Positions 1-58,596 are shown, numbered from the stretch's first letter. The stretch: DNA of 58,596 bases from Bugula neritina (GCA_964035545.1 CAXIUT010000243.1:1-58596), one strand, 5' to 3'. Numbers and translations: made by a program. Notes: generated from the letters alone by a model not told the origin.

Positions 1-77
1 CCCAACCCCAACCCCAACCCCAACCCCAACCCCAACCCCAACCCCAACCCCAACCCCAACCCCAACCCCAACCCCAA
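1..77 (+). repeat. Left telomere, (CCCCAA)n
   Basis: Perfect CCCCAA hexamer array at the window start; Tetrahymena-type C4A2 repeat. Confidence 0.98.
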
Positions 78-103
78 ATACATATCATCAATACAAATAA
101 AGA

Positions 104-2602: not shown

Positions 2603-2766
2603 AGTTTATAATATCAATATCCAAGTAAAATAATATAATATTAAAGAAGCTAATAATAAAGATAAAACTATTGACTAATAAGCCAATCATATTTGATCTT
2701 CATTTACTTAAAAGTATAAAGAATGATTCATAATACTGAAATAATAGATATAAATAACATTCTAGA

Positions 2767-3805
2767 TCATTTATTTTTGAAAAGAACAGCATAAATACTT
2801 CCCAAAACCAACAACGCCCCAGCAAACATATCAGATTGACTTATTAATGATACCTAATCGTACTATAAAAATATCCAATCAGCACATTCAACTGAATCAT
2901 TATAGTAGATACTCCAGAATTAGTACCAATCAGCAACCCGAAATTAAACGTCAAATTGGCAAAAGCAATCACAGATCCACTATAAATATAAAGATATATA
3001 TCGAATTACTAAGATCTAGTAAACAAAGGTATCTTATTGTCATTAACATTAGATAGTGTCATACTCATGCATGAAAAAAAGAAATATCCTATAAGCGTAT
3101 TAACTAGCAACAACTAAGTAACAGAAGAATGGTGTTTGCTAGTAATAACAACTCCATAAGCAAATATTAAATTCAACACTATCACTCCCAAACAATTGGC
3201 CACAAACACAACCAACTAGTCAGAACTGTAGTCAAAAGTACTAGTAAAAGATGAAGTTCCCTCGATCAAACTATAGACATATCGACCATTAATCACAAGA
3301 ACCAGTCCAACGATAGCAACGGCAACAGCTTTAGCCTGTCCAGCAGTCACAGGCGTATGATATAGATAATGATTAAACATAAAAACAAATATGATGGAGC
3401 TGCTTGACAGGGTATAGAAGACAGGGAGAGGAAGATACATTTGAAAGAAAGCAACAAATAAACCATTAATCGATGATATCATTGCCCTTACCACCAGTAT
3501 TTTAAAATCTTTAGAATGAGTTAAATTAAATGATCGAGTACTTAGCATTATTATCGTTGTCTGGATAAATATTTGAGAAGTATAGCGAGAATAGTTCATC
3601 TATATCGGACTCGTCTTCTGCTCATTTGCATATATGTAACCTGATACCCATAGCAAACAAGATATTGGCATGCAAATAAAATTTGATAAATTTGTATTTG
3701 ATATAAATGGCAACACCTGAGCCGCTTGTATTGGTCCTGGTTCTTCTAGGACGAAAGAGGAAGGAATTTGTCTTTTTTAGGCATTTAAATCTATTATTTG
3801 CTCAT
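2767..3805 (-). CDS. EamA/DMT-family multi-pass membrane transporter
   Basis: Typical DMT helices (LVVRAMISS, YLPLPVFYTLSSSSIIFVFMFNHYL, VGLVLVI, GALLVLGS). Needs two 1-nt corrections in homopolymers (3773-3778, 2817-2820), so both ends are uncertain. Confidence 0.7.
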
Positions 3806-3845
3806 TATTTTTATATTATTAAATCAATACGCTAATTATATTGAA

Positions 3846-6329: not shown

Positions 6330-6439
6330 TTTGTTTTTAAATATTGAAATTACAGATTCAAAAATATCTATCTTAAAAGTTAACGATTAATACAAAACAA
6401 TAGCTGATTGATAATCAATTAAAAGATATTCACTTTCAG

Positions 6440-9435: not shown

Positions 9436-9535
9436 TTAATTATAGAGTCAAACAGTCACAACTCTTTTGAGTCAGATTCAGCCAAACATTTATAATATTA
9501 ATTTTTAAGGTATGATAATTATAAGTTAATTGAGA

Positions 9536-10839
9536 TCACAGCCGAAGAAATATCTTAAATTTGAATAGAAGTCCTCCAGCTAAAGTCAAAACAACTCCAT
9601 AAAAGAAAGTATAAATCAAAGTACCCATATATGCTCCCATCCAAGAAAAAACAGCATCATATAGAGCAATAAAAGGAGTACGATCATCTCCCCATGATAT
9701 CCATCCATTAAGAATATCACCAGTTAGCTGGAGCAAAATAAATACTGCCAATGGATTGAGACCAAGCCAGTTGAATGGCTGAATAATTGTTTGAATTTTT
9801 CCTTTGGCTGAAGGATAAAGTTTAGGTAAAATATCGATGGTTATCATCAAAAAAGAAAGTATTACGGCACAAGAACCCAAAGTTATAAACACAAATGTTG
9901 TTGTGTATAATCTTTTGTTGAAAGGCATGACTAATGAACTTGGATATACGCATAGAAAACAGATAAAAGCAAAAACTAACCAATTTTTAACCAATTTTTA
10001 TGGTTATTTTTTCAACTTCATCACCATAATGCCAAATAAATATCCGATATAGGTAGTAAAAGCAGCTGTAATAGTTGAAATAAGACCCTAAGGATCAGTT
10101 TTTTACATAATATGATCTTCTGTAAAGACAGCCCGATCCACAAAACCAGCAAAATTACAAAAAGGTTAAAGATTATTTTATTTTTTGCAACCAATCGATT
10201 CGTCAGACCAAGTAAGCATCAAAACAACATAAAGAAGAACAAATGCTATCATAACTAAACCTGCTATCGTTCTTTTTGTAATATTAGTTCCATACTACGT
10301 AACCCAATGAATGAAAAGATTGATCCCGTAGCATAGAGCCAATCTCTGCAAAATACCTAATATTCTCACTAAATAACGATATTTTTACAATGAGGAAAAT
10401 CGAATGATTAAATGATATTAAGGACAAGTCCAATAGCAAATAAAGCAAATACTCTTATAACGTTTTTTCTTTGTATAGGTCTACCTTTACTCACAGCTAG
10501 CGGAATAGCCATACCCATAATAAACAAGAAAGCAGGAAAAACAAGATCAGCGCATGATAGACCATTCCAATCAGGATGAATCAACCACCACACAGCTCCA
10601 TCTATCCTATACGTCTGATCCGCCAGTATCATTCCAAATACAGTCAGACCTCTGTAGACGTCAAGAGACAGAAGTCTTTATTTTGTTGATGCTGATGGTT
10701 TCTTTTCTTCTTCGTTATTTTGTTCTATCTTTTAGGGATTTAAACTCGATTCAGGATTATTAATTTGATCTTCAAGCAGTTGAGAGTTTAGCTCTTTTAT
10801 TTTTTCACTCTACTATACCTATGAATCCTTATTTAGCAT
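9536..10839 (-). CDS. HGSNAT: Heparan-alpha-glucosaminide N-acetyltransferase-like membrane protein (~427 aa)
   Basis: RLLSLDVYRGLT; HPDWNGLSCADLVFPAFLFIMGMAI; RILGILQRLA; DPEGLIST; PFNKRLYT; WLGLNPL. Intron at 10369-10388. Confidence 0.9.
10369..10388 (-). other. 20-nt spliceosomal intron (HGSNAT)
   Basis: GTAAAAATATCGTTATTTAG; removal gives FPHLRILGILQR. Confidence 0.88.
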
Positions 10840-10933
10840 TTTTAACAATAATAAAATTATGTCGACTATTTAACAATAATAAATCTTAAAAGAATGCTAG
10901 ATTATTTATTTGTTGGAAATCAAGAAGGTTTTT

Positions 10934-12712
10934 TCAATTATTGTCTACTTTAATTGAACTTTCAAGTTTATAATTAGACTATTCTGCCTGAAGGTGTTTC
11001 TTCAATAATGAATCATTGTCTTTTAAATCAAAATTTCCACCTAACTCATTTAAAGCTTTCTTCTTTTATTTCGATCTTTCCTCTCTCTCCTGATAATTCC
11101 TCTCTTAAATACTTTCCTGATGTATGATTTTTGCATCTTGATGAGTTTTATAATGAGGATCTTCTTTTAGTGAAGCACTATTCGATAAACCAATCGATTT
11201 GTTATCTTATTTTGATTAATTTTATATTTTTCTACTCATTTGACTGGGATAGTTAGTCTGTATTTTATTTTTAGTGTCAGATATCAAATCAGAAAGAGTA
11301 TTTTTAGAGATAGCCTATGGATTTTAAGCCATATGAAATGGTTTTTTATGTCTCAGATCATTAATATTAGAATACCCAGTAATTCTATTTTTGAAGACAG
11401 ATGAAGTATCTTCAGCCTCTTTTAAATATTTACTAAATTGATTTTTATGATGATTATGTTCTATAGGTTTAAAATATCTATTATTAGCTTTAGAAGGCAA
11501 AATAGGTAAAGAACATTTTCTCCTCTGAAGTTGCTGTGATCTCTATTTAATCTTAACTTCTTTGGGTAAGACCTGACTCATGCTCTAAGAATTATAAACC
11601 TTTATCTTATCTTAATGAACTATTTTAGATTAATTAACAACAGACTAATTATTAAAATGAGGATTATTGAATAGAGATAACTTTCCATGACTAAGTTGTT
11701 TTTTATGAAGCGATTTATGAATGATATCTTTATAGCAATTATAGAAATCACTAGAACTATACTTGATTGCATGAGATTGCAATTTAGCTACAAATTAATG
11801 ATAATATTTAACATGCAAAGCATTAAGCAAAAGCTAAATATGAATCAAACTTCTAGGATCGATATTTTAATGTACTTTAATAGCAACATAAACCAATGCC
11901 AATAGAAATGATTAATAGTTCATGTATTTTTGTAAATATGATGTTTTCCTAAACACATTCAATAGTATGCTTTTGCTTATATTGTTATTATGCTAGGTTT
12001 TTCTTTTGAATTATACCATTTTTAGAAGATCAAAATCTCTACAAAATAACATAAATCTATTTAATGTCAATATGTCCAAAGATTGAGTTACATCGTCAAA
12101 TGTATTTGTTCTTTTATGCTAGTTTTATATCACAAATCTGCAATAGTGTTTATAAACTATTTTCAACTGGTTTTTATACATATGAACCATCTATAACGAC
12201 TTTTTCATTACGTTTTATTGCTATTATAATGACAATTCTCCAAACACTTTTTTACCTTTATTGCTTATCTATGGCTTTTTGACTTATGCCAAAGAAGTAC
12301 CTTTAGCTAACTAAAATTAGTTAATATTCTAATACTATTAGTTTGGGTGTTAATTGACTCTTGATGATGACATATCTTCATTGATCCATCTCCAGATTTC
12401 AAGACAATCAGAAAGATCAAAGGATTTTTGTTATTAATGAATAAAAGGTATTTAACCTTTAGATAGACTTCCTAGCTATTTCTGTTGAATATATTTAAGA
12501 ACAAAGCTATGAATTTTTTATTTGAATTCTTTAGTATTAGTTTGAAGAGTTTATTGATTTGAGTATGGCTTTAGTTTTTCATTTTTTTGAGCTACAAGCA
12601 ATACAAATTATTTAGTTTTAGGCAGTGATATTTTCAATTCGTTATTAGGATTGACAATTTGCCAACTTTTATCCACAATAAAAGAATTCTATGAGTAAAG
12701 ACTATCCTTCAT
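10934..12712 (-). CDS. Hypothetical protein (~592 aa)
   Basis: ATG-TGA frame is consistent at every point checked; contains VYKHYCRF...TFDDVTQSLDILTLNRFMLFCRDF. No family recognised. Confidence 0.6.
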
Positions 12713-12976
12713 AAATTTATTAACCTTCAAAAATATAATCAAATCAAATATCATATCAACCAATTAGTCATGAAATAAAATAATCACTAAATTGATCATT
12801 AAATCTATAAATATCTCAATCAATTGAATAAAACTCAAAAATACTATAAATAATATAAAATACTATAAAATATGATAATAATCAAATAAGTTAATATTGG
12901 TATGATTAGAAGAAAAAGAGGAAAAGATGTGTTAAAAGAATGATAAAATAGTAAACTAGATCATTATTCTAGATAA

Positions 12977-15900
12977 TCAAGGTTAAAGTAGTACTCTCAA
13001 AGTAGGTGCATGTTTGATCAAATTGTCTCCAACTCCCATCACTAAAGTAAAATCAATAAACTGGCATCCCTATTCTCCTATCTCCTCTGCTATCAATGAA
13101 TGAATAGTCTTCTTAAACAACTTCTGCTTCTCCTCTTTCTTACTCTACAAACTCATCACAAAATCAGAATATATCTGAGGACCCTAAGATAACGTTAAAC
13201 CCTTCACCTTTATCTCGTATTTCTACTCTATACCATCAATCAACTCTCCAATCATCTTATCTTTAGCCAAAGGACCTATACTCCATCTCTACCATATATT
13301 AGTATCCAACTTATCATGAACTTTTATCTTCTAAACAGGACCAGGTTCACCCATAGTCAAAGACGGGACAGCTAAATTAAGAAAAGCATTTCTTAGTTAT
13401 TCTAAAGGACATCCTCTCAGATATTTTACCAGTTAAATAGTTTGAAGAGCAGCAACACAACTAGTAGTAGTAGATAATGCTGGAGTAATTCTACCTGCTT
13501 TCAGTTTGACAGTGATCCAATCCATTTAATCAAGTTTATAATTACGAGCTCTTAGGTTTGCCATTGAGTATATCAAATCGATGTGACCATTTTGATCCTA
13601 ATCTTTTTAGAATTATTCAGGTTTTGATTCAATATGTTAGCTATTTTCTTTAATTTATTCGATCATCTTTATGAATTTATGGTATAAATTATGTTCATTT
13701 TCATCTTAGTTAGGTTAAGTCATCAATTCAGCAAGCTATGATTTTTACTTTTTTTAAACCTCCTTTTAAGTCTACTTTCCTGTTGCTTAATTATCAACTT
13801 CACTAGCCAATTATTTAGCCAATTTATCAGAAGGCTCAAATGGTTCTACTTTCATTGAACTAGCAGTTAAAGTGATTTCCTCTCTACGATTATTTTATCT
13901 AAAATCTTTAGGATAAGGAATTCCATATATTTTACTAATAAGCACTGCATAAGATGAGATAAAGGTAGAATGTAGGGGATCTTTGGGTAGAATTTATGAT
14001 ATAGGAACAGGAGGTCTTTTAGGTAACTTCCAAAATGGTTTTCCATCTTTAGTTTGAGCATCAAGGGGATAAGTATAAAGAAGTTGCATTACATCATTTC
14101 TAAACAACTGATAAAAGATCTTGGTAGCTATATAAATAGAATCTTAAAAGTTAGTCGGTCTAGCATCAACAAGTTTAATACAATCCTTCAACATCAAAAT
14201 ATCAGATGGTCCCACTACATACTTACCACTTTCATCTAATAACTTTTTAAGAGCCTTAGGATTCAAAGTAAATTCTTTGCCAAATAGATCTCTAGCCCAT
14301 TCAACACAGTGCAAAGTCTATTAAGGAAACATTTTCAATGTACAATGAGGAATATCGCCTTGAGCGTCATTGGGATCCTGCATATTGCCATAAGTTTAAG
14401 TTTTAAATGGAACTATCACCTGCACATGACCTTTAGAACTAAGAGTACCACTCTATAATAGTGGCCTTTTAGTTTATACGCATCGACTATCCACATATCT
14501 CCTGGCCTATACATTGTCTAAAGCATTTGTAACGATTGTCAACTCCTAGAAAAACTCATTATTGAATACATCCTTTGATGATTATGACACCTTGTCCAGT
14601 CGAGGTTTTATATGACCCTTTAATCTAGGATTCATCTGGGTCACTGCTGCCGATGCTGTTGCACTTTTAGGTTTACGTAGATGTTTTTATCTGAATAAAA
14701 ATTGTCTATTTAAATTTGAATTTTATATATGATCTGGATCAGTTACAGTAATATTGCCATTTCCTGTACCAATTTCTAACATAGCAAAATTTTTCAATAG
14801 CTCACAACCAATAGCACCAGAACCAATCATAAATACCTTTGCATCTTCAAGTTTACCCAGCATATCAGCACCAATAATCTTTCTAAAACCATCTGTACGA
14901 TTATCAACAGGAGCTCTCTTCAAAATATATTCCTTCCATGCCTCTTATTAATCTGGAATAGTTTAGATAATTTATGAAAATTCAGCTATAAAGTACTGAT
15001 TGATAGGAGTATATTTGCCAGTAATAGCTTTGAATGCTTATTGAGCAGTTATTCCTCCATAGAAAGCACAAATAGATCCAAAAGTACCTGAACAAGTATA
15101 ACTAAATGCTTTACAATATTTTATCTATTACTAACTTAGTTATGTCCTTCTTTTCTTGACTAGTTAAATCAATTTATCTGCATCTTTTTTATCCCATGAA
15201 CAAGGCATCTTATGATTTTATTTAGTAAAATCACTTAGAGATAAGAATAGTTGATGTAAAAGTTTTAATTTGTTCATTTTTGACCAGTCATAGATCTATA
15301 AATTGGAATCAATGTTTTGAAGTTAAATGCATTCTTCTAACGACTTGAAATCAATATATTTAGGTGTTTTTATATTACAAACAGTGCCTTATCCTTCATA
15401 AGGAGCATAATCTTAAGTATTACCTATCTCAAAACTAGCACTATTTATCACTTTTATTTTATGTAAAGTATTATTTATGCTCTTATCACTATTTAATGAC
15501 TTCATTCCCTTAACTCCTGTTATTCTGACAGTATCTCCATCTTAGTAAGGATGCCTGAGACCTTTCACAACTCGAACTACTCCTTTCTCACCTATACTGA
15601 TATCCTATATCAAGACATCAACTGTATCTTCTCCATCTTTGTCAATCACTTAAAATTTCTATCCAAAATCATTGAATATTTGACCATAAGGACCATAACA
15701 ATCAACTGATAAGAAATATATTTTGTTTGCTCTACAAAAAGAATTGATTTTGATTTGTTCTTCGAGTGATCTTTCAGTTGTTATGACTACTTGGTAGTTT
15801 TTCAGGTTTTAAAGATCATTATGTTTATATTAGAATTTAGTCATTTTCACATAATGATTTAACTACTGTAATTTAAAGAAAGAACTTTATAATCTTGATT

Positions 15901-18900
15901 TTCCCACATCTGATTCTGATAAAAAGAACTGACCACTAAGATCAGAATAAGACACATTTTTATCATCCCAAACAGCAAACTATCTACACCCACTCAGCAC
16001 AATGTTCTTAGCTATTTCTACGCCCAGAGATCCAAGTCCTAACAACACTATTCCAGCCTTACTTTGTTTAGTTACAGCCTAGACTCCCATAGCTCCAATA
16101 TATCGACTCCACCTATCTTTAACCTTCTCATCATTGATATCTAACTACAACAACTAACCTTTTTATCCATAACTAACATCAATTTCTTATATTTGCAATT
16201 ATTATTTAATAACTTATGACTTTTAAACCTTCTTTTTAGCTTTTTTAGAAGAATTATCTTTTTTAAAATCTCCTTGAGTGGGTGGAGGAAGTTTATTTAG
16301 TTCAGTTTATAGTTATTGAATACATTTAGCCATCATTGTTTTATATTATGTCTTTGATTTCTTAAATGTATTGCACCAGTTGTAGTTATGATCGCTGACT
16401 AAACCATTATATGATGCCTCTCTTTTCTAGGCCAACTTTAACCATCTATTGCATTCATGTAAAATTTATTATTTCTTCAAATAAAAATGCCTTCTAATGA
16501 CTGATTAGAAACCTTTTGGGGGATTCTTTATGTTCTCAAGCATTGCATATTTTACGTTAGAATATCTTACAATATTAGCATAGGCTTCATTCTTTTTCTC
16601 GCCTTCAGGAGTACCTTGTTCATGTTCGAATCCAGGTTCGTTAAAGTAGATATCTTCACTCATAATAATTGATTGAATCGATACTAGAACTTGAAGAAGA
16701 GTTGATACCTTTGCATCCCAGTTTTACATAGCCTGACCTCTCCATGTTCCCAGCAAACTTAAACATACCTTACCACATGCATATAAATTAGGATTAAATC
16801 TGACTTGACCACTACCTGTTGTCATCAAGTTAACTTTTGGAGGACTATTAGGATAAGTATCCTCGAAATAGACATCAAAAAGGAAAGCTCCATGACCATA
16901 AGGAGTACCATTAGATCCCATAATCAATGCCTGCATAAAATCAACTCTTTCCTTATCACATCGAACATAGATAGCATTAGTATGATCTATTGGCAAAGCA
17001 TGAGATATATCTGCCAACTCTTGAGCTAATCTTATTGTTTTATCAACTGGAGGTTTATGTCCTGTTTGGTAATTGCTTGCATAGTGATGTTTACTTATCT
17101 TGTTGGAGGAGTCCTTCATATCGATGTAGTCAAATCTAAGATCTTTCATAAGTAGGGGATATTTCTTGAGCAAAGGAAGTTATAATATTTTTTTATCTTA
17201 TTTATCATCTTGATGATGAGTTGTTTCATATTAAGAAACAGTTTATTCAACTAGTTAGTATGTAGAAATGATTTTTTTGGCAATTTATTCTGAAACTTTT
17301 TCAGAAGCAGAGCCAGTAAGACATGATATGAATATTTTTGAAGTGCTAGCTAAAGTTTTCAAAAGAGAAAGCAAAGATTCAGATTGTTTGGGTTAATAAC
17401 ACTTAGGAATAGACATAAGAATTGATGTAAGACTCTTACATCTAGTTATTACTTGAATGAAATCTAGTTCTCCTTGGAATAACTCTGCATATTTAGATAT
17501 TTAGAGTAGAGATCCTCCTCTGAGAGATGATTATATGATAGGAAGAAGAGAACTTTCAAGTGTTTGATTCAATATCTCAGGAGGGTAGTTGAAGTCGCTG
17601 CAATCGAAAAATTGTTAAAGAATTTTAAGAAGACTTAGTATCTGTTAAGATGTTTACTTTCTAGCTTATTATTGACCAGTAACATCCCACTTTTGATTAG
17701 CTGAACTATCAGTTCCATATCCAACTCCTTGTTTTTTAACCAATTTTGTTTTGAAGTCTTACTCTGATGATTTCTTTTGAAGCATAGCAGGAACCAGTTC
17801 ATCTTATTCGATACTTTATTCTTATATTTTAAATCTTTTAGGTTCCTTAGTGATCATGAATAGTCTTTCTAGCATGATTTTATAAAATCCACTTTTGATG
17901 GCATAATTTCTAACAATTTTAGCTTGTTCTCCTTTAACAGCAAAAACATCTTTGATAATTTAATATAATTCTTTTACTGAAGACTTTTATTTTAGAAGCC
18001 ATTTTTTGTTATCTTGCTTATCTGGTAAACTCAACAATAAATCAAAAAGAAGTAGAACATTTCCTTGCTTATTAATATAGAGAGAACTAAAAACAGGAAA
18101 ACATGAATAACTCTACAACTATTTAAGATATTGACCCCATATGTTAGATTGTTATCGATTCGACCAGTTCTTAACACTGCCAGCAAGAACAGTTATCATT
18201 TTTTATAACCCTTTTTTCTATTCAAAAGCCTTAAAAATAGTTTATTGAGAAATAAAAGAATCAACACTTACATTTTATTTTGAAAGAGTTTCAATACTAC
18301 TACTAGCAAATATTTATGAGGCCTCAATTTATAATTTAATAAAAGGTTATTTTTGTTCAAGAAGTACTTATTTAAGATTGACATTTAGAGAAAGTTTTTT
18401 ATCAGTAAGATAATTTTTAACATTGATTTTTTATAGATCTGCAGAATTGACTTTAAATCCTCCAATATTGATTTGTTTAAGTAATTAATTGATTTTCATT
18501 TATTGAGGTATAAAATAACATCTTTATGTGGTTGATTATTTAATAGGTAAAACTCCTCTATATTTTTAATCTAATATCCAAGGATTATCTAGATTAAGTA
18601 AAGTAGTATTAGTTAATAAATTTTTCTACCATTAGTTCTACTAATAAACCTTATATTATTCAGGCAACACACTGATAGTTTATGTATTTGATACTGATAT
18701 TTTTATTTTTCCATCTTTGAATTCATGCTTTCTTTATTTTTTTGCAACTATGTCCCATAAAATACCTTTACATAACTTATATTTTTTAACATCAGTTGTT
18801 TTTTCAATAAATAGCAAGTTATGTTTCAAGTTAAACTCATCTATACTATCTATCGGTTAATAATGTTGGTTTTAATAGGTAATAACTTTAAGACTACTTT

Positions 18901-21900
18901 TGATAGGTTTGATTTCCAAGATATCAGTAACTTGTTTAAGATATTAATGATTATTTTTCCAAACAAAGAGTAATGGTATTCCATTGAAAGCATTAATCAA
19001 TGGGAAAAAGAAGCTATGAATGAAGAAGTTATGATGTACTGGATTAAAATCATTAATACTGGTCATTAACTGAATTAATATCTAACTGAATTCATCTTGA
19101 CAGGAAGTATCAATACATGTAGTTTGGAAAAAGTTTATAAACAGTTTCATTGTATCATTATTATATTTTATTAAAATACTTGTTGTACTTTTAAGTAATT
19201 ATGCTATTTTAATTGGTGCTCTTTTCTCTATCAATTGTTATTTAGCATTTTTATTCAATATAAAAGTACATAATAGTTTCAAATGATGTAAAGGTTAGTT
19301 AGATATCGTATTTGCGTTTTGATTTTATGATAAAATCTATAGTAGTTCTTAGAATATTTATACAACATAATTTTTAGATGAACAGTTTTATAATTAAACA
19401 GCATAATAAGGTAAAACAGCAGCCAAAATAGAATAAAATTTACTTCTTTCCGACTTATTCATGATTTAAGTGATTAATTTTCGAATATCATAACGATATA
19501 TAGTAGGAACAGTTAATAAAGAGTTAATCAATGAAAGATAGAGTTATTGTGTATTATTTTTTGAAGTTTAATACTTTTGAAGAAGCATTTTAATATTCTA
19601 AAAGTCAGCAAAACCTTCCTGCATTTTATTTTACACAGAATAACTACATAATCTTAAACTTAATGTGACAATATCAATAAATTCTGAAGAAATACTATTT
19701 AATGTATGAGCTAATAGCTTATTTATATTTTATTTAGTAAGTTTACTCAGAACAAGACTTTTTACTAATTTGGAATTAGTTCCTTTAGATTTAAGTAAAT
19801 GCTATAAAATATTTTATCCTTATTGATTCAAAGCTAACAATAACTCCTAAATCTGTTCATTGGGTAAAAGGTCATTTAATACTTGAATAATCAATTCTAG
19901 TTTTTGGTCAAAATAAGGTGAACTAAGGACTGCTCTCAAGTCTTTTCTATATTTCTTTTGACCCAAAAATCCTAAAAGAGTCAAGTATATTGATGTATAG
20001 TCAGGATCATCAGTAGGAAGAGTATCATATCCATTGATACTGATAAATGAAATGCTATACATTGCTCCTTTTTTACTCTTTTGACTATTTTAAAGGATCT
20101 AACTTGCTGAATTTAATAGTGGATCACTTAATCTGAACTATAAATTTTTTAAAGGAGATAAACCAATAGAAGATAGTTAATTCAGATTCAATCCAAAGAG
20201 CTTTACACCATAAGATAGGTAAAATTGGTCTTCTAAAGGAACCATCTCACCTATTTTCAGTTGTATTTTTTAATTACCTCCAAAAAGATCAACTCTAGAT
20301 GGTAAAATAGCAGTCTTATTTTAAACATGATCATTTAGACAAAAACCAATGACAAATTTAGTTGGAGATTGAGCTGTCTAGCAACTTATTTTGATGTTTT
20401 TGTGGGTAATTGGGACTTTAAAAGCTGGATTTTTACTTCCTCCCTTACCTGTTTGAAGATCTTTGACAGAGGAAACATCTTTAACTTCAAAATGTTCTGA
20501 TAACTAAACTTATTTAGTTGGATTCCATTTATTAGACTTCAATGGTCTTTTGAGTGTACTTGCTTTAAGATCATTGATAATAGTTGAAATAAGAGGATGC
20601 TATCCTCCAACAAGGACAGGAGATAGAGACCCTGGAGTTAAAGTTTGCGAAAGCAAAATTGTAGCTCCATGATGAAGTTGATTAAAAAGAAGATGTCTTT
20701 TAGTCAATGATATTCTTTTGGATTGTTTGATTGATTTTAATGCCTATGAGTATTTACTAAGGACTGAGGCAGGATCAGAATGTTTGACTAGTCTAAGAAT
20801 TTGGTCTATGAGTTGTTTGATAAGGTAGTAGTTAGGAGATTTGTTTGCTGGATTGACTGATATCAGTTAGTAATCATTATTATTGAGATACCAGTTAATA
20901 AAAAGATCTTCATTGGGCAGTTCTGCTCCTTCTGGAAGAATCTATACTACTTTAAGCATTTCAACAGCTGCTTGTAAATTATATAAATTTGAATCATTTG
21001 TCATTTTTGCTCCTTCTATTCCTCCATAATTACATAATTCAGTTATGAATTTTCCTATTGTTTAAAGAAAATCATAATGTAGAGTAGTACACTTATCTCC
21101 CAGAGTTAAAAACAATTTAGCCAGAATATTTTTATTTTTCATGTAGATCTGATCCAAAAAAACAGCAAATTATTCAGAATATTTAGGCTTAGCTGCAGTT
21201 ATAAAGAGAATGCTATGCTGTTGTGCTAGGACCTAAGGAATATCACTATGTAAAAATTGATGCATTATCATGTCAGTAGCTTCAGTACATGAACTAATTA
21301 CTCTTTATAGTTGCTACCAAATCACTTCTTATTGCTGGAATATAATACTCACTACATCAAGATCTACAGGATTACTATCAGAGGCTCTTTCAACTATCTA
21401 CTAGATAAGAATCTACAAGCGAGGTTTAGCACTGGGATCAAGTACAAGTTTGCTGAGGTTTTTGTATGATATAGAGTTCAGGAAATGATGATAGAGATCA
21501 TCAGTAAGAGAGGTAATATAATTAAGAATAACTTTGTTATTTATCCATTTTTATTCTTTGATAAAGTATTCAATGATCTATTTATGACTTTAAGTGAGAG
21601 GAGACATTTTAATAAGAAGTTCTACCCATTTTTATTAATATGGTACTCCTCTTAAAATCAATCTAGTCAAAGATCTACATAAATCACTGTTATTTAAGTC
21701 AAGAACGTTAATTAGCTGTTCATAGGAAAATTAGATATGACCTAGTGATGACATTTCATATTAGATATATGGCAAGCTTTTGATTAAAAGACTTATTTTG
21801 TGAGAAATAGCTTTAAATGCTAAAATTTTAATTGGTCCTTTAGCTACTTCCAAAATAGTGCTAAAAATCGTTTAACAAGTACTATCTTCTACATTAACTT

Positions 21901-24900
21901 TTAAATTTTGAAGTTGTGTTAGAGTCAGAGCTATTACTGTATAGAGATAATCTAGAGTTATTTTAGAACTAAATACTTTATTTTTGAGAAGCTTTTTTTG
22001 AATATTAACGATAGAATCAAGATCATTTCTGTTTATTTTATCTTAAAGAGATGCTTGTAGTATTTTGATATCTTACTTATAGGGTGTATAATAGATATAT
22101 TCAATATTTTTTCCTTTAGAAATTGAATATTTTTTCATATGACTTGATGACAAAGAAGTCAATGATAAGAAAAACATATCTTCAGGATTAAATCCAAATA
22201 ACTCATCAATATAATGTATATTCTAACCTTTTCCAATCGAATACCCATAAATTTAAGGTAAAATATCAACTTGAGACACTTTATTATCACTAATAGAACT
22301 AATAATGCCAGTTTAACTAAAATGTAGTTCTACTTATAGGTATTCAGCTTATATTTGATCAGTATCTAATCCAAACATATTTAGAGATTTATTTATTGAG
22401 CTACTATCTTCTTGATAAGAAATTTTAGCTAGCTGAATCCATTGGTGTTAGTGGATAGTTCCAGAACTTACCAGTTTTTTTCCTTGAGCCTGCAATCGAT
22501 AGATACTATAGTAAACTTTGGATGAATACTATGATTTCTATATTTTAAGAGTAGCATTAGTTATTTGATACTTTGATGGCAATTTCATGATTATTCTTCT
22601 GCTATAGTCACTTTTAAATACAGCTATTTCGCATTTAATCAGTTCCTATTCGAATATTTTATGGCTTTATTCTTTGTTATTCTAGACCAAGTTAAAATAG
22701 TAGTTACTATAGAATTATTTTTCAAAGTAAAGATAAGAATTTTAACTCCCAAGATTTCTATATTATTTAGATCTTTTAGTATTTACTGTTTCAAGAGCTA
22801 ATTTCAAAATCTATTGGAGGATCTAAGGAGATAGCTTTTGAATAGTTTGCTATAAAAACTGGAAAGGTAGAATTGGTACTGAATTAATTGATTTTATAAA
22901 TTAAGTAAGATACTACTGTCCATGTTTATTACTCCATATTTTTTACATTATCGATTTATAGTATTATTTCCCTTAGATATTTTGAGAAATAAAGACCACC
23001 ATATCAATGAACTGTCTCATATATTTTTGTTAATAATTATCCAAAGAAAAAGAACAAGAACGAGATATATATTTCAAAAAAGGCTACATATTTTTACTAG
23101 CATAGTTCGATGATAGATATTTTATGAGTATATTTGGTTTCTTACATTCCATTTACTAGAATATATTGATTTTAGTTGATAAAGATAACTAAGTAGAATT
23201 TAGAATTTAGAATTTATCTGATATATTTAGAGATAAATCTCCTTTCTATGATATTTGAATTGTGTATTATAGCTATATTGTATTAGTTGAGATAGGTTTA
23301 AAAGATAAAACAAAAACTCTTTGTTTTGATGATTAATTTATTAAATTAGATAGTTTTTGAGAATATTCTCTATGATATACTTATTGCGATACTGATGCTC
23401 CATAAATAGTAACTGAACCTAACTAAAATGGTAATTTCTTAATATTAGTATACTTTGGTTCTACAACAATTTCCTTCCAATAAGATTTACTATTAATATC
23501 TATAACAGCTTCTTCTTTATCCTCTTCAAATTTAAAATTATATTTTTGACTTTTATTTCCCCAGCTATCTCTAAAATATATATAACCTTCTTTTATATAG
23601 TTAACATTCTTTCTATTGAGACATCGTTTTAAATTCACTTTCTTTGTCTGAACCAATAGTCCATAGAGATGCTTCAGCCTTATTCCATGAGGATAGTTGC
23701 CTAGAAATGATCCATTAGGTGAAAAAATAGATGAAATTGAATAATTTTTATTAACTCCTGGCGGACCGTGCTAGATAGTAAGAGGAATCACCTCAGAGCA
23801 GTTATTAGGTTGTTCAAGAAGAGATAGATCTATTTTTATGGTTATTTTTTGAACTTGAGATGTCGATGATGAATTTTTATCATTTTTATCAACATTTGAT
23901 GGGATAATTTATCCTTTAATAGATCTAAAAACATCTTTCAATTGAAAAGGAAGCTATCTAGGAGGTTATTTGATCAACAATGATGACTATTTTAAGTATA
24001 AATTGTCTAGTAAGTAGTTAATTTATTGAGAAAAAGGTTTATTATTTTTAAGATAAATGAAATACATATTTTTATTAGATTTTGACAAGAATTATATCTT
24101 TTATTTAACTTCCAAAGAATCTAAAATACTCAAAGAAGGATGATTACTCTAATTATACCATTTTTAATAATCAATATACTCCATCGAAGGTTCATGCTTA
24201 AAAGAATTCAAATCAACAAACTAATTCTTTCCATAATAAACATATTTTCTCAACTACGATGGCACTACACCCAAAACCAATAAAGTATTATTAATTGACA
24301 CCAACAATCTGGTATAAATCGTATTCATTTCTACCATTGACACCAACTCACCACATATTTGAGTTTATTCCTTATTATTCTATTTTTTCTTCAACTCTTT
24401 TCTTTCACTATATATCCATACTAAAGCTTCTTCTATATTACCAGTATTTTAGAGAGCTCTAATAGCTATTTCTTCTTCAATGCTAAAGACTTTGACCAAC
24501 TCTTGTATATCATTTTTACTAGCTACATAATTTTACTCTTCCTTTCTTTTTTGTTAAAGAGATGATGTTAGAATTTTATACAAACAAGATCCATCATTTT
24601 GTAAATACCTCAAATCAGCTTATTGATAGGATTATACCAATACTCTTTTATTTATACTTTTGCTATTTATAGTCTCTCTGAATATCTACCTTATCTATCT
24701 GCCTAGATGATAAATGATAATGGTATTATCTTTTTTAGATAGAAGATAGTTTTAAGTTATTTATTTTATATCTCCTTAAATATTTACTTGATTTGAACCA
24801 CATTGAAGTTACAAAAGTTATTTTTTTATATTTTTGTAGCCTTCAAAATATTAAAGAGCCTATCTATATCTTCCTATATCTAGCTCACAATGCAAACTCG

Positions 24901-25981
24901 GATTAGGAATAGTTACCCCAATCTAATACAAATAAGGTCGAATAATAAATAATTTTAGTAAAAGCAAACGATAAAGGTCAACTCTATCTGACTACTATTC
25001 ATCTAGCTGGCATAGTAAATATCGAATCCATTCGAAACAATTCTGCAAACTAATAAGATGACATAATTAAAATAAACTTTTCTATCCTCTCCAACTTTTT
25101 AGTTGTAAATACTATTCTTTTGAAAATAAATTTAAGACTCCAGATTTATGAACAGCTGTCTGAGGAAAATAAAATTAATAAGTTGAAGGGTTTCTCCTTA
25201 TGAGTTTAATTTTATTATTTTACCAAACCAGTAACATTTTATCTTAAGAAACTTGAATTAATTTGGTTAAAATAGGATCTTTTGGAAGTTACTATTTGAT
25301 TTATTGAACTTTATTTGGTTATTTTAAGTGAAGAAAACCGAAGGGATTGAATGACGATAGTTAGTTGATTTTGGTAGTTAGAAATGGACTGAAAATAAGA
25401 GTATTTCCTTTTTTTTTGATAGAGGCACAAGGAAATATTTTATATTTTTTTATTTAGTTGCTAATATCAACACTATTCTGTTTATTTGGTTTAGTTCCAT
25501 TAATCCAGGCTTCCATCTTATTGTCTTTAATTGTAAAAGAAATGGTTCTAGCAGTTGAAGAATTGAAATTCATGAGTTGATATGACATTATCTGGTTGTC
25601 ATTCATAGTACAGATTCCCAATTCAATTGAAGAAAGAGATTGAGGAGAATACCATTACCAAAATGAACCAGTCTGCACTTCACTACAACTTCGTATTATC
25701 GCCTATTAACTACTCACTGCTGCAATATTGCTCTGCACATTCCGAAGTACCTCACCCTCTATAGTCACCAAATGACCCATCAAGGGAGGACGAGGATCCG
25801 TACTTGACAAATGAATCGACACCTTTTGTTATTCACTGCCAGTAGACTGAACTCTAAGACTCCCATCGCGAAGGAAATAAGTGCGCTGATGACAAGAGTC
25901 AAAGAAGTAGGCCTCCGAGTTGAGTTGAACAGGAAGAGTGGCTTACGGACGGAGCATAGATACGAAATAATTATCAATCAT
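12977..25981 (-). CDS. Giant ubiquitin E2-E1 fusion protein (~4334 aa): N-terminal scaffold with UBA-like domain + BIRC6/UBE2Z-type UBC + complete UBA1/UBA6-type E1
   Basis: A manual scan found no in-frame TGA across 13,005 nt, and supplied ORFs 14723-14923, 16724-17173, 19847-20062 and 23423-23656 share this frame. UBC: GTPYGHGAFLFD, RFNPNLYACGKVCLSLLGTW, LQVLVSIQS, YFNEPGFE. E1: DRWSRYIG, GLGSLGVEIAKNIVLSG, IGSGAIGCELLKN, SNLNRQFLF, NALDNV, PLLESGT, IPHCTLKMFP, FEKDEDQNGHID, AGRITPALSTTT, RNAFLNLAVP. An alternative in-frame ATG lies at 26035. Confidence 0.9.
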
Positions 25982-26034
25982 CCAACTATAATCAAAATAT
26001 AGCTCTTCATACAATAAATCAGAATCAATTACCA

Positions 26035-26906
26035 TCACTTAGTCTAGTCCACCTTCACCTCTTCAACCTCGTTCACTGTATTACCCACGATGATTTCCAT
26101 AGCTTTACTAGCAGAGATAAGTAGTGAATCATCTTCTTTGTATTAGTTTTACACCTAGGTGTTCTCTTTATCTTCTTCTTTCTACTTGGAGTCTAAGGCG
26201 ATAGTTTCCTTCTTTTTTGAACCTAGAATAGAAAATTTGTTGTGAATACTTGGCCTCAAAAATCTTTTGTATGATTCTTCAATAGTTAAAGGAGTCTATA
26301 ATTTTTATAAAGGTTTAGTTGGTTTCTTACAACTTTCTAACACCTCAATAGTCAATTCTTAAGGAGCCTTTTTGACTATTTCTTTCGGTTAATCTTTTTT
26401 TTGTTTCATTTGTTCGATAGGTTTATACTTTTTTTTCATTGGGTCTTATTTGATTGATTCTTTGTTTTTTTATTTAACTTGTGAAACAGACCTCCCAGTA
26501 CTTTTTTATCTACTTACTTTATTAGTGAACTGCAGGTTGTAAAGAAAGGTAGCAAGATGAAAGTTGTCCTGATACTTCATCTGTGCTAGTTTATCAATCT
26601 AGATAGCATTTTATGTACTTCAATTGGATAAGAAATGTTCTATTTTTGTAAAGCAGAAGCTAGCATCATCAAATTATTTCTCCTAGCAAACTCATTGTTA
26701 GCTTTAAGGTTTATTTTTTGAGGTCTAATACTGTTCGGCAGAATTTTGTTCAAAATGAAAAGATAGGCTATTCCATTACCTAACTCTCCAAGGTCTTTCA
26801 CTTTAGCCATAGAGCTGGGAAGGGCATCGTTTACCCATGTGATAAGTTATGATTTGGTGGGGTTCTTTTTGGATGGAATAAGAGTGCTTCTCGAGGTGGG
26901 TCGCAT
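26035..26906 (-). CDS. EB1: EB1/RP-family microtubule end-binding protein (calponin-homology domain; ~283 aa)
   Basis: KSELITWVNDAL...ELGNGIAYLFILNKILP...NNLMMLASALQKE..PIE/IDKLAQMKYQDNF matches the EB1 CH domain. Intron at 26599-26618. Confidence 0.8.
26599..26618 (-). other. 20-nt spliceosomal intron (EB1)
   Basis: GTACATAAAATGCTATCTAG; removal restores the EB1 frame. Confidence 0.85.
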
Positions 26907-47594: not shown

Positions 47595-47695
47595 TTGGAT
47601 AGTTTAGATATTGTTTTATAAGTAGAATTCTTATCGATTCTAGTAAGTTCAGATTTAAATTTGAAATGAATGGTATAGGATATATCAATTAAATT

Positions 47696-58527: not shown

Positions 58528-58596
58528 GGGGTTGGGGTTGGGGTTGGGGTTGGGGTTGGGGTTGGGGTTGGGGTTGGGGTTGGGGATTGGGGTTGG
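58528..58596 (+). repeat. Right telomere, (GGGGTT)n
   Basis: Terminal array with one GGGGATT variant unit. Confidence 0.98.

What the first reader, a model, noticed from the sequence alone, without database searches (positions are those of the whole stretch)
12977..17173. E2 and E1 fused in one polypeptide: candidate self-contained ubiquitination cascade
Seen in sequence: translated codon by codon (TAR=Glu), the UBC domain (catalytic Cys codon 16763-16765, NPNLYACGKVCLSLLGTW) runs through a ~100-aa linker straight into a full-length E1. That E1 has the inactive and active adenylation domains (IGSGAIG, SNLNRQFLF), the catalytic Cys (14342-14344, IPHCTLK) and a C-terminal ubiquitin-fold region, with no stop or intron between the two enzymes. 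Established: E1 and E2 are normally separate proteins; this UBC subtype (BIRC6/UBE2Z-like) is the class charged by UBA6 in animals; bacterial CBASS Cap2 is an unrelated fusion with the same E2-then-E1 order. Inference: the protein activates ubiquitin or a Ubl and passes it to its own E2 (in cis or across a dimer), forming a channelled pathway insulated from the housekeeping E1. From memory, very long E1-annotated proteins exist in other ciliate proteomes, so the architecture may not be unique, but I know of no functional description.
Basis: partly seen in the sequence, partly recalled or inferred. Interest (0 to 1): 0.9.

Follow-up and report, generated by a model that had tools for sequence, protein, structure and literature searches.

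The report
Giant ciliate E2-E1 ubiquitin enzyme fusion
A ciliate chromosome encodes one roughly 4,350-residue protein that joins a BIRC6-type ubiquitin-conjugating domain to a complete UBA6-like ubiquitin-activating enzyme; the fusion is real and conserved in many ciliates, already sits unstudied in databases, and physically links two enzymes that work as a dedicated pair in animals.

Summary
On the minus strand, 12977-17173 is one frame with 78 TAA/TAG codons (shown here to mean Glu) and a single TGA at its end.

Three corrections:
- The frame runs on without a TGA to 26062. The gene is about 4,350 codons, and UBC-E1 is only its C-terminal third.
- The "100-aa linker" is mostly the BIRC6-type C-terminal UBC extension. 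The real K/E-rich connector is about 35 aa.
- The fusion is not unique. More than 140 database proteins share it, including Tetrahymena thermophila XP_976852.2 (7,545 aa, labelled "ubiquitin-activating enzyme E1"), which is colinear with this protein. Others come from Paramecium, Ichthyophthirius, Platyophrya transcripts, telomere-capped single-gene rumen-ciliate nanochromosomes and one GC-rich non-ciliate contig.

The UBC is BIRC6-type (138 bits against about 70 for UBE2Z and UBE2O). The E1 clade is sister to free UBA6 (SH-aLRT 98), but an AU test does not reject a UBA1 affinity. The spacing from the E2 Cys to the E1 start is 190-233 aa in 142 fusions.

Likely function: a self-charging E1-E2(-E3-like) ligase. 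No RNA or biochemical evidence exists for this organism, and I found no paper describing the fusion.

The parts
12977..26035 (-). Whole coding sequence of the giant protein. It starts at the first in-frame ATG (residue 10 of the open frame, 26033-26035); the alternative start is Met28 at 25979-25981. The stop is TGA at 12977-12979.
   Evidence: The frame is TGA-free for 4,361 codons. It is colinear from the N-terminus to the C-terminus with T. thermophila P0342 and with P0354. The C-terminal length matches the orthologue.
25172..25741 (-). Conserved N-terminal beta-rich domain (aa 108-297), possibly SPRY-like and a candidate substrate-binding module.
   Evidence: BLAST to P0354 82-279 (1e-9) and to P0342 179-296 (1e-9). 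The ESM Atlas features point to SPRY/Neuralized clusters at 0.85, which is a lead only. Pfam SPRY reaches E=0.033 on the homologue, below cut-off. The AF2 model was too poor to use.
24377..24505 (-). UBA-like stretch (aa 520-562), recognised by sequence pattern only.
   Evidence: Seen by eye. Homologous giants carry Pfam UBA_7. The six-frame UBA_7 search did not hit the window, and BLAST to the homologue's UBA found nothing. Unconfirmed.
17183..18517 (-). Conserved pre-UBC region (aa 2516-2960), shared with all fused homologues and with unfused BIRC6-type giants.
   Evidence: BLAST gives 1e-43 to 1e-15 against many fused proteins and 8.6e-9 against the Thecamonas 4,129-aa UBC giant P0033. It gives 3e-25 against P0342.
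17030..17173 (-). BIRC6-type N-terminal extension of the UBC domain (aa 2964-3011).
   Evidence: It aligns with human BIRC6 UBC constructs from their residue 27 onward, as part of the 138-bit match.
16493..17029 (-). UBC core (aa 3012-3190). The catalytic Cys3100 is codon 16763-16765, in the motif FNPNLYACGKVCLSLLGTW.
   Evidence: Pfam UQ_con. PDB scores: BIRC6 138 bits, UBE2Z 72, UBE2O 71.
16244..16492 (-). BIRC6-type C-terminal helical extension of the UBC (aa 3191-3273).
   Evidence: Window aa 3100-3273 align to the post-Cys tail of animal BIRC6 P0137 at 37% identity, 1e-41.
16142..16243 (-). Short Lys/Glu-rich connector (aa 3274-3307) between the E2 module and the E1.
   Evidence: Sequence. 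The Cys-to-E1-start distance is 208 aa here and 190-233 aa (median 209) in 142 fused proteins. The X3 strain contig crosses it without gaps.
15623..16141 (-). E1 inactive adenylation domain (aa 3308-3480), with the clade signature WSRYIGAMG.
   Evidence: ThiF at 15674-16096, 68 bits. Alignment.
15368..15589 (-). E1 first catalytic cysteine half-domain (FCCH).
   Evidence: PF16190, 64 bits.
15152..15367 (-). E1 four-helix bundle.
   Evidence: PF16191, 54.7 bits.
14327..14878 (-). E1 active adenylation domain. It carries GSGAIGCE, TDPDHIENSNLNRQFLFR and ALDNVEARRYVD, and the catalytic Cys3907 (codon 14342-14344, IPHCTLK) at its end.
   Evidence: ThiF, 148 bits. Motif alignment.
13505..14326 (-). 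E1 second catalytic cysteine half-domain (SCCH). It contains an acidic insert with a 12-nt in-frame length polymorphism at 13751/13763.
   Evidence: PF10585, 190 bits over profile positions 1-254.
12986..13315 (-). E1 ubiquitin-fold domain (aa 4250-4359), the E2-docking domain.
   Evidence: A custom HMM built from homologues gives E=5.5e-15. The domain carries the UBA6-type motif (QFIDFTLVM, compare KYVDLTVSF) and lacks the UBA1 insertion.
1..77 (.). Left telomere, (C4A2)n.
58528..58596 (.). Right telomere, (G4T2)n.

Best explanation
What it is. The window is a complete, telomere-capped macronuclear chromosome of a ciliate that reads TAA/TAG as Glu. On its minus strand it carries one gene of about 13 kb (12977-26035) for a single protein of about 4,350 residues. 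In order, the protein has:
- an N-terminal beta-rich, possibly SPRY-like, domain;
- a long, poorly conserved arm;
- a conserved pre-UBC region;
- a BIRC6-type UBC domain with both BIRC6-specific extensions (Cys3100);
- a Lys/Glu connector of about 35 residues;
- a complete canonical ubiquitin E1 of the UBA6 lineage (IAD, FCCH, 4HB, AAD, SCCH with Cys3907, UFD).

Proposed mechanism (inferred from the known chemistry of these families, not shown here):
1. The E1 module binds ATP and ubiquitin, adenylates ubiquitin and loads it on Cys3907.
2. The tethered UBC docks on the UFD and SCCH, as BIRC6 does on UBA6, and receives ubiquitin on Cys3100. This could happen within one chain or between chains of an oligomer.
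3. The giant N-terminal arm selects substrates, so the protein works as an E3-independent E2/E3 hybrid like BIRC6 that carries its own E1.

It is the orthologue of T. thermophila XP_976852.2 and belongs to a conserved but uncharacterised family.
For: Shown:
- Single frame. There is no TGA in 4,361 codons, in DNA of about 30% G+C.
- No hidden introns. The E1 has no window-specific insertion relative to 58 homologues, and the family-typical 208-aa spacing leaves no room for one.
- Purifying selection. Of the strain differences listed across the E1, the tail end of the UBC domain and the downstream half of the gene, 31 are synonymous and 9 are not. An indel there is 12 nt and in frame.
- Every E1 and E2 domain and catalytic motif is present.
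- The same fusion appears in more than 140 proteins.
- In rumen ciliates it is the only ORF (1,968 aa, standard code) on complete 6.3-kb nanochromosomes with telomeres at both ends.
- RNA-derived ORFs span the junction in relatives: Platyophrya MMETSP0127 P0315 and P0268, Trinity P0308 (4,094 aa, ORF complete), and TSA GILK01004046 P0225.
- The whole protein is colinear with the 7,545-aa T. thermophila protein and with the litostome gene split by two introns.
- The UBC is BIRC6-type.
- E1 affinity. All best unfused hits carry UBA6 labels. PDB scores are UBA6 649 bits against UBA1 624. The tree puts the fused clade (100) as sister to free UBA6 (98). The UFD indel and motif are shared with UBA6.
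- Published work shows that the BIRC6 UBC binds the UBA6 UFD tightly and is charged only by UBA6 (PMC12999496).
Against: - No RNA or protein data exist for this organism, so an internal promoter or proteolytic processing cannot be excluded.
- The AU test does not reject grouping the fused E1s with UBA1 (delta lnL 21.9, p=0.19). UBA1 sampling was thin: two sequences and no ciliate UBA1.
- The first 2,450 residues match relatives only in short patches. They carry no BIR or Pfam BIRC6 domain, so the E3-like substrate arm is an analogy.
- Complex prediction of the UBC with the E1 C-terminal half gave no verdict.
- Low-depth contigs of run X3 (depth about 2) show 1-nt deletions at 15359 and 17132 in short homopolymers. 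These are most likely assembly errors, but this was not verified.
Confidence: 0.72

Rival explanations
1. The fused E1 is the cell's general UBA6-type E1. The tethered BIRC6-type UBC is only one of several clients. The E1 module also charges free E2s, so the pathway is privileged rather than insulated.
For: - The UFD, SCCH and all docking elements of a canonical E1 are retained.
- No free UBA6-type gene from a ciliate appeared among the hits. The five unfused rows inside the fused clade are near-identical truncated models.
- Human UBA6 serves several E2s, with BIRC6 taking priority (PMC12999496).
Against: - A tethered E2 with a fixed short connector would compete strongly with free E2s for the single UFD site (inference).
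- The near-invariant spacing argues for a dedicated geometry.
- Whether ciliates have USE1/UBE2Z-like E2s was not examined.
Confidence: 0.3
2. Two products from one locus. The giant E2 arm and the E1 are made as separate proteins, through an internal promoter, alternative polyadenylation or proteolytic cleavage in the K/E connector. The shared frame then only reflects gene fusion at the DNA level.
For: - No transcript data exist for this organism.
- The connector is Lys/Glu-rich and probably exposed.
- Several database models begin near the UBC, although at least some of these are truncated by introns or contig ends.
Against: - In a TGA-only stop code, an upstream product cannot terminate without a TGA, and there is none in 4,361 codons.
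- RNA-derived ORFs in relatives span both halves.
- The rumen-ciliate nanochromosomes carry a single ORF.
- The fusion and its spacing are conserved across more than 140 proteins.
Confidence: 0.1
3. One half is a pseudoenzyme. The E1 or the UBC is kept as a scaffold or regulatory domain and no longer carries ubiquitin.
For: - The HPN triad reads NPN.
- The IAD N-terminal motif is WSRYIxAMG instead of YSRQxYVLG.
Against: - NPN is the normal BIRC6 state (alignment).
- Both catalytic cysteines, the ATP-binding glycine loop, NLNRQFLFR and the Mg-binding Asp motif are invariant across 44-45 fused homologues.
- Strain variation is mostly synonymous.
Confidence: 0.05
4. Assembly chimera or contamination artefact. 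The UBC and the E1 come from different molecules that were joined by the assembler.
For: The contig sits in an assembly dominated by an animal host.
Against: - The contig is telomere to telomere.
- An independent 5.4-kb contig of X1 covers 13814-18800 with no difference.
- Contigs from two other studies cross the junction.
- Orthologues elsewhere have the same order and spacing.
Confidence: 0.02

Closest known systems
Animal UBA6 plus BIRC6 (BRUCE/Apollon), two separate proteins
   Same: - The UBC is BIRC6-type, including the N- and C-terminal extensions and the NPN motif.
- The E1 has the full canonical architecture, is closest to UBA6 and has a UBA6-type UFD.
- In animals this E1 is the exclusive charger of this E2, and the BIRC6 UBC binds the UBA6 UFD tightly (PMC12999496).
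- Like BIRC6, it is a giant protein with the UBC far from the N-terminus.
   Different: - Here the two enzymes are one polypeptide, joined by a connector of about 35 aa.
- There is no BIR domain, no Pfam BIRC6 domain and no detectable similarity to the BIRC6 arm upstream of the pre-UBC region.
- The UBC is internal rather than C-terminal.
- The sister position to UBA6 is favoured but not statistically secured.
Tetrahymena thermophila SB210 XP_976852.2 / EAR86388.2 / UniRef100_Q22N18, 'ubiquitin-activating enzyme E1', 7,545 aa (database entry only)
   Same: - It is colinear from the N-terminal domain through the pre-UBC region, UBC and E1, with 47.7% identity over UBC-E1.
- Domain order is the same, including E1_UFD.
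- It groups with the window and Ichthyophthirius in the E1 tree at support 99.
   Different: - The arm is about 3,200 residues longer.
- It uses the TAR=Gln code.
- I found no paper about it.
CBASS Cap2 and related bacterial E1-E2 fusions
   Same: The E2-like domain lies N-terminal to an adenylating E1 in one chain, and the cargo passes from the E1 to the fused E2 (PMC12355090).
   Different: - Cap2 has a minimal ATG7/ThiF-like homodimeric E1 without FCCH, SCCH or UFD.
- Its cargo is a CD-NTase, not ubiquitin.
- It shares no homology with this protein beyond the superfamily level, so the fusion arose independently.
- Membership was not tested against PADLOC.
UBE2O (E2/E3 hybrid)
   Same: A large E3-independent E2 with substrate-binding regions N-terminal to a related UBC.
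   Different: The UBC scores only 71 bits against 138 for BIRC6. UBE2O has no fused E1.

Membership tests
Canonical UBA1/UBA6-class ubiquitin E1 | Two ThiF-type adenylation domains, one inactive and one active, in a single chain | tested here: met
   PF00899 at 15674-16096 (68 bits) and at 14327-14878 (148 bits).
Canonical UBA1/UBA6-class ubiquitin E1 | FCCH, four-helix bundle, and SCCH with the catalytic Cys | tested here: met
   PF16190 64 bits. PF16191 54.7 bits. PF10585 190 bits over the full length. Cys3907 lies in IPHCTLK and aligns with the catalytic Cys of UBA1 and UBA6.
Canonical UBA1/UBA6-class ubiquitin E1 | C-terminal ubiquitin-fold domain | tested here: met
   Pfam PF09358 did not hit the window in the six-frame search. 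An HMM of the UFD columns of 58 homologues, built without the window, hits aa 4250-4359 at E=5.5e-15. The orthologue P0342 hits PF09358 at 6e-12.
Canonical UBA1/UBA6-class ubiquitin E1 | ATP/Mg-binding motifs (GxGxxGCE, NLNRQFLFR, ALDN...D) | tested here: met
   Alignment. The motifs are invariant in 44 fused homologues.
UBA6 subfamily | Phylogenetic placement with UBA6 to the exclusion of UBA1 | tested here: inconclusive
   The ML tree places the fused clade as sister to free UBA6 with SH-aLRT 98. The AU test does not reject fused+UBA1 (p=0.19). Only 2 UBA1 and 4 divergent stramenopile E1 sequences were sampled, and no ciliate UBA1.
UBA6 subfamily | UBA6-type UFD: no UBA1 insertion, and the K-Y-V-D-L-x-V motif | tested here: met
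   Alignment, with few UBA1 rows. It is consistent with the shorter UFD helices of UBA6 reported in PMC12999496.
UBA6 subfamily | Dual activation of ubiquitin and FAT10, and charging of USE1/BIRC6 | not testable with these tools
   Requires biochemistry.
UBC (E2) superfamily | UQ_con fold with the catalytic Cys downstream of the HPN-type motif | tested here: met
   PF00179 75 bits and 5e-17. The motif is FNPNLYACGKVC, and the Cys is invariant in 45 homologues.
BIRC6 (BRUCE/Apollon) | BIRC6-type UBC with N- and C-terminal extensions | tested here: met
   138 bits to human BIRC6 UBC, starting at the N-terminal extension. The post-Cys tail aligns at 1e-41 to animal BIRC6.
BIRC6 (BRUCE/Apollon) | BIR domain, and the Pfam BIRC6 domain in the arm | tested here: not met
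   PF12356 hits only the host gene on C3. Window aa 1-2450 give no BLAST match to the BIR- and BIRC6-domain-bearing P0137. PF00653 was not run directly on the window. The window protein is therefore not filed as a BIRC6 orthologue; only its UBC module is BIRC6-type.
CBASS Cap2-type E1-E2 fusion | Minimal ThiF/ATG7-like E1 fused to an E2-like domain, encoded in a CD-NTase operon | tested here: not met
   The E1 here is the full eukaryotic UBA1/UBA6 type with FCCH, SCCH and UFD. The context is a eukaryotic chromosome whose neighbours are V-ATPase a, a C13 peptidase and Cse1. The PADLOC library was not searched.

The most novel reading that the evidence does not exclude
The protein is an all-in-one E1-E2-E3-like ubiquitin ligase that charges its own UBC in cis. 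The near-invariant spacing of about 209 residues between the E2 Cys and the E1 start is the geometric signature of that intramolecular hand-off. Ciliates, and at least one GC-rich non-ciliate lineage, keep UBA6 only in this fused form. On this reading the UBA6-BIRC6 partnership is much older than opisthokonts, and UBA6's original job was to serve a BIRC6-type E2.
Probability: 0.4. Interest if true: 0.75.

Novelty: new variant of a known kind. Interest (0 to 1): 0.6.

Why it matters
Why specialists would care:
- Eukaryotic E1 and E2 enzymes are textbook separate proteins. The only fusions described in the papers I could search are bacterial (Cap2 and relatives).
- Work from 2025-2026 dissects why BIRC6 is charged only by UBA6. 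This protein is a natural "Rosetta-stone" fusion of those two partners.
- The fusion is conserved across ciliate classes with a fixed spacing, and it has a genetically tractable orthologue in Tetrahymena. Cis against trans thioester transfer, E1-E2 specificity and E3-independent ligation can therefore be tested in a single polypeptide.
- It suggests that the UBA6 lineage and its pairing with BIRC6-type E2s predate opisthokonts. [quoted passage not shown]

What limits the novelty:
- The sequences have been public for years under generic names.
- This window adds one more member, a peritrich-code ciliate riding in an animal genome assembly.
- I could not read Burroughs et al. 2008 and 2009, which may already list the architecture.

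Tried and rejected
- RNA evidence. No run on record as RNA holds the locus. Only DNA contigs could be laid on it.
- Earlier findings. The search of earlier findings returned nothing for this place.
- Complex prediction. I submitted the T. thermophila UBC (P0342:6069-6330) with the E1 C-terminal half (6869-7545). The score was 0.46, but a control scored 0.43. The verdict was "no answer", so I do not use it either way.
- AF2 model of the N-terminal domain. With a 4-sequence alignment the mean pLDDT was 49, too poor for a fold search. SPRY therefore stays a lead.
- Modelling the whole UBC-connector-E1 module. It needs about 1,250-1,300 contiguous residues, above the 1,200 limit, so it was not done.
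- Pfam BIRC6 (PF12356), E1_UFD (PF09358) and UBA_7 (PF22562) six-frame searches hit only host genes.
- The ciliate's own UBA1, wanted for the tree. C246 and C234 are other ThiF proteins. C109 holds only an E1 N-terminal-half-like ORF. A UBA1 was not found in this assembly.
- Hidden in-frame introns. None are indicated.
- Two genes sharing one frame. Rejected, because there is no TGA between them.
- The 680-codon TGA-free continuation below 12977. It begins with about 100 residues of AT-rich, non-protein-like sequence and looks like the 3' UTR followed by a separate downstream gene. The E1 C-terminus also matches the orthologue in length.
- Literature. Six full-text searches found no description of a eukaryotic E2-E1 fusion. 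A seventh search only traced the two Burroughs/Aravind papers. PMC2732565 and PMC2701696 are not held.
- Operators' notes.

Full report
**1. The observation**

The minus-strand frame of 12977-17173 has 1,399 codons with 54 TAA, 24 TAG and one TGA, which is the last codon.

TAA and TAG encode Glu here:
- In 11 of the 13 well-conserved alignment columns that fall on window TAR codons, the homologues have Glu.
- Strain differences include TAA>GAA at 13657 and 13813 and GAG>TAG at 13882.

The window is the whole contig C252 of a 216-Mb, 321-contig assembly. It carries (C4A2)n at 1-77 and (G4T2)n at 58528-58596, so it is a complete ciliate macronuclear chromosome. The multi-megabase contigs of the assembly give exon-wise hits without TAR codons, so they belong to an animal host.

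All E1 and E2 domains are found:

| Domain | Window position | Score |
|---|---|---|
| UQ_con | 16655-17029 | 75 bits |
| ThiF (inactive) | 15674-16096 | 68 bits |
| ThiF (active) | 14327-14878 | 148 bits |
| E1_FCCH | 15368-15589 | 64 bits |
| E1_4HB | 15152-15367 | 54.7 bits |
| UBA_E1_SCCH | 13505-14326 | 190 bits, full profile |
| UFD | aa 4250-4359 | E=5.5e-15, homologue HMM |

Pfam's own UFD model missed the window. The nucleotide-binding and catalytic motifs are intact.

**2. The feature is larger than reported**

The same frame stays free of TGA up to 26062, which makes 4,361 codons in DNA of about 30% G+C. UBC-E1 is residues 2964-4361 of this ORF. The probable start is Met10 (26033-26035) or Met28.

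Evidence that the upstream part belongs to the same protein:
- The N-terminal domain (aa 108-297) matches the N-terminal domain of two relatives at the same distance from their starts: P0354 82-279 and T. thermophila P0342 179-296, both at 1e-9.
- Further colinear patches follow at aa 1669-1758 and 1902-1960.
- The pre-UBC region (aa 2516-2915) matches at 3e-25.
- UBC-E1 is 47.7% identical.

The C-terminus matches the orthologue in length, so the TGA at 12977 is the true stop. The TGA-free stretch beyond it looks like UTR followed by another gene.

**3. The "linker"**

Residues 3100-3273 align with the post-Cys tail of an animal BIRC6 (P0137, which carries BIR and BIRC6 Pfam domains) at 37% identity, 1e-41.

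Only about 35 Lys/Glu-rich residues (16142-16243) connect it to the E1, whose first conserved motif is WSRYIGAMG.

**4. Is it one gene?**

- In this genetic code a product cannot terminate without a TGA, and there is none.
- An independent contig of run X1 covers 13814-18800 with no difference. A strain 1-2% diverged, from another study and organism label (X3), spans 16083-16849 without gaps.
- Of the 40 strain differences that were listed, 31 are synonymous. A length difference is 12 nt and in frame.
- Two 1-nt deletions in X3, at word depth about 2, lie in short homopolymers and are probably assembly errors.
- There are no window-specific insertions in the E1 relative to 58 homologues, so no hidden in-frame introns are indicated.
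- No RNA run holds the locus, so direct transcript evidence is missing for this organism.

**5. Relatives**

A phmmer search with the 151-aa stop-free UBC piece against 1.84 billion representatives found proteins in which the UBC is followed by about 1,250 further residues. Pfam shows that these residues are a full E1.

Two wider searches listed about 100 clusters with the same architecture. Named members:
- T. thermophila XP_976852.2, "ubiquitin-activating enzyme E1", 7,545 aa. Its Pfam domains run UQ_con, FCCH, 4HB, two ThiF, SCCH, UFD.
- T. malaccensis and T. utriculariae.
- Several Paramecium species, with several paralogues each, labelled "UBC core domain-containing protein".
- Ichthyophthirius, labelled "UBA6, putative, partial".

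RNA-derived ORFs span both halves in three cases: Platyophrya MMETSP0127, a 4,094-aa Trinity ORF marked complete (it also has a ZZ finger), and TSA GILK01004046.

The cleanest proof comes from sheep-rumen metagenomes. Four independent 6.3-kb contigs have (CCCCAAT)n telomeres at both ends and a single 1,968-aa ORF in the standard code, which is UBC followed by E1.

In another group (L018-L021, one with a GGGGATT telomere) a same-strand ORF of more than 4,000 aa with a UBA domain is followed, after two short frame-changing gaps that look like introns, by the UBC-E1 ORF. These loci are colinear with window aa 2590-4360.

A 58% G+C contig (L027) carries an intron-less 4,621-aa version. Its protein cluster includes a "Picozoa" SAG entry, so the fusion is probably not confined to ciliates.

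**6. A constrained geometry**

In 142 fused proteins the N-terminal arm before the E2 Cys varies from about 90 to 6,200 residues. The distance from the E2 Cys to the first E1 residue is 190-233 (median 209; window 208). This is hard to explain for a passive tether. It fits a defined spatial relation between the two active sites; that last step is inference.

**7. What kind of E2 and E1**

E2. Against solved structures the UBC piece scores 138 bits with human BIRC6, and the match includes BIRC6's N-terminal extension. UBE2Z scores 72 bits and UBE2O 71.

The arm is not BIRC6-like. The Pfam BIRC6 domain does not hit, and aa 1-2450 give no BLAST match to BIRC6. I therefore call the UBC module BIRC6-type and do not call the protein a BIRC6 orthologue.

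E1. The evidence for a UBA6 affinity is:
- The best unfused hits among 5.8 billion proteins are all labelled UBA6 (Balamuthia, Branchiostoma, Lineus, Patella, Biomphalaria). The first UBA1 appears only at rank 120 (the UBA1 identity of P0304 was checked).
- Human UBA6 aligns end to end at 649 bits. UBA1 scores 624 and UBA7 447.
- An LG+C20 tree of 59 E1s (1,002 columns) recovers all fused E1s as one clade (support 100) that is sister to free UBA6 (98), with UBA1 and stramenopile E1s outside. The window groups with Tetrahymena and Ichthyophthirius (99).
- The UFD of the fused proteins shares the UBA6 motif and lacks the UBA1 insertion.

An AU test does not reject fused+UBA1 (p=0.19), and UBA1 sampling was thin. 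I rate the UBA6 affinity as likely, at about 0.7, and not as established.

**8. Mechanism**

Published work shows that BIRC6 is charged only by UBA6. It also shows that the BIRC6 UBC binds the UBA6 UFD tightly and needs both the UFD and the SCCH (PMC12999496).

The ciliate protein carries every element of that reaction in one chain. The most economical reading has three steps:
1. The E1 module activates ubiquitin on Cys3907.
2. The tethered UBC takes it on Cys3100.
3. The N-terminal arm selects substrates, as in the E2/E3 hybrids BIRC6 and UBE2O. The arm has a possibly SPRY-like domain (lead only) and a UBA-like stretch.

Open questions:
- whether transfer is in cis or in trans;
- whether free E2s are also served;
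- what the substrates are.

A complex prediction gave no verdict.

**9. Context**

The neighbours I sampled on the chromosome are ordinary housekeeping genes: the V-ATPase a subunit, a C13 peptidase and Cse1. There is no functional cluster around the gene.

**10. Novelty**

Full-text searches found E1-E2 fusions only in bacteria (Cap2 and relatives). A 2025 E1 review treats such fusions as prokaryotic. The recent UBA6-BIRC6 papers take a metazoan view, and a 2024 review dates UBA6 to the fungal-animal ancestor. No paper cites the Tetrahymena entry.

Two comparative papers that might list the architecture could not be read.

The sequences themselves have been public under generic names for years. 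This window adds a new member from a peritrich-code ciliate. The architecture is best described as an unstudied fused variant of the known UBA6-BIRC6 cascade.

Noticed in passing
window 1-58596 (G000:C252); G000 contigs C1-C7 compared with the small contigs: The window is a complete 58.6-kb telomere-to-telomere ciliate macronuclear chromosome that uses TAR=Glu. It sits inside a 216-Mb assembly whose multi-megabase contigs are an animal genome. Many small contigs show the same in-frame TAA/TAG, so a ciliate (epibiont or contaminant) was co-assembled with the host.
   Followed up: partly
L027 (JGI 3300060420, Ga0591019_0000873) 43-13908: An intron-less 4,621-aa UBC-E1 fusion in the standard code lies on a 58% G+C contig next to an ankyrin-repeat gene. 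Its protein cluster includes a 'Picozoa sp. COSAG06' EukProt entry. The fusion therefore seems to exist outside ciliates, or the SAG is contaminated.
   Followed up: partly
L014-L017 (ENA sheep-rumen metagenomes): These are complete 6.3-kb gene-sized chromosomes with (CCCCAAT)n telomeres and 23% G+C. They were recovered almost identically from four samples, and each carries only the 1,968-aa fusion gene.
   Followed up: yes
G000:C109:4332-5330 (L028): A 332-codon TGA-free ORF on another telomere-bearing ciliate contig resembles only the N-terminal half of a UBA1/UBA6-type E1 (IAD-FCCH-4HB, about 26% identity, E1_FCCH 58 bits). It has no active adenylation domain nearby in the 10 kb I read.
   Followed up: partly
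window 13751 / 13763: There is a 12-nt in-frame insertion polymorphism (TTTTAAACCTCC/T on the + strand) in the acidic insert of the SCCH domain. It appears in runs X3 and X5 at slightly different positions and looks like a four-codon repeat-unit gain.
   Followed up: no
window 47543-48702 (+) and 4352-9447 (-): The C13 peptidase gene and the V-ATPase a-subunit gene each continue across overlapping TGA-free ORFs in different frames. This organism therefore has short frame-changing introns, which makes the intron-free 13-kb giant gene stand out.
   Followed up: no
P0331 (ENA, 1,612 aa): This is a UBA1/UBA6-type E1 that also carries a UCH deubiquitinase domain (PF00443) according to precomputed Pfam. 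It is another unusual E1 fusion and sits on a very long branch in the tree.
   Followed up: no
P0308, P0306, P0307, P0309, P0310 (about 4,000-4,094 aa): A subgroup of the fused giants carries a ZZ zinc finger around residue 600 of the arm. The window protein shows none.
   Followed up: no
L023 (G000:C4:18316000-18325999) and L025 (G000:C5:17421000-17430000): The host animal has two multi-exon UBA1/UBA6-type E1 genes and a BIRC6 gene (C3:13663771-13663980). It therefore probably keeps both UBA1 and UBA6.
   Followed up: no
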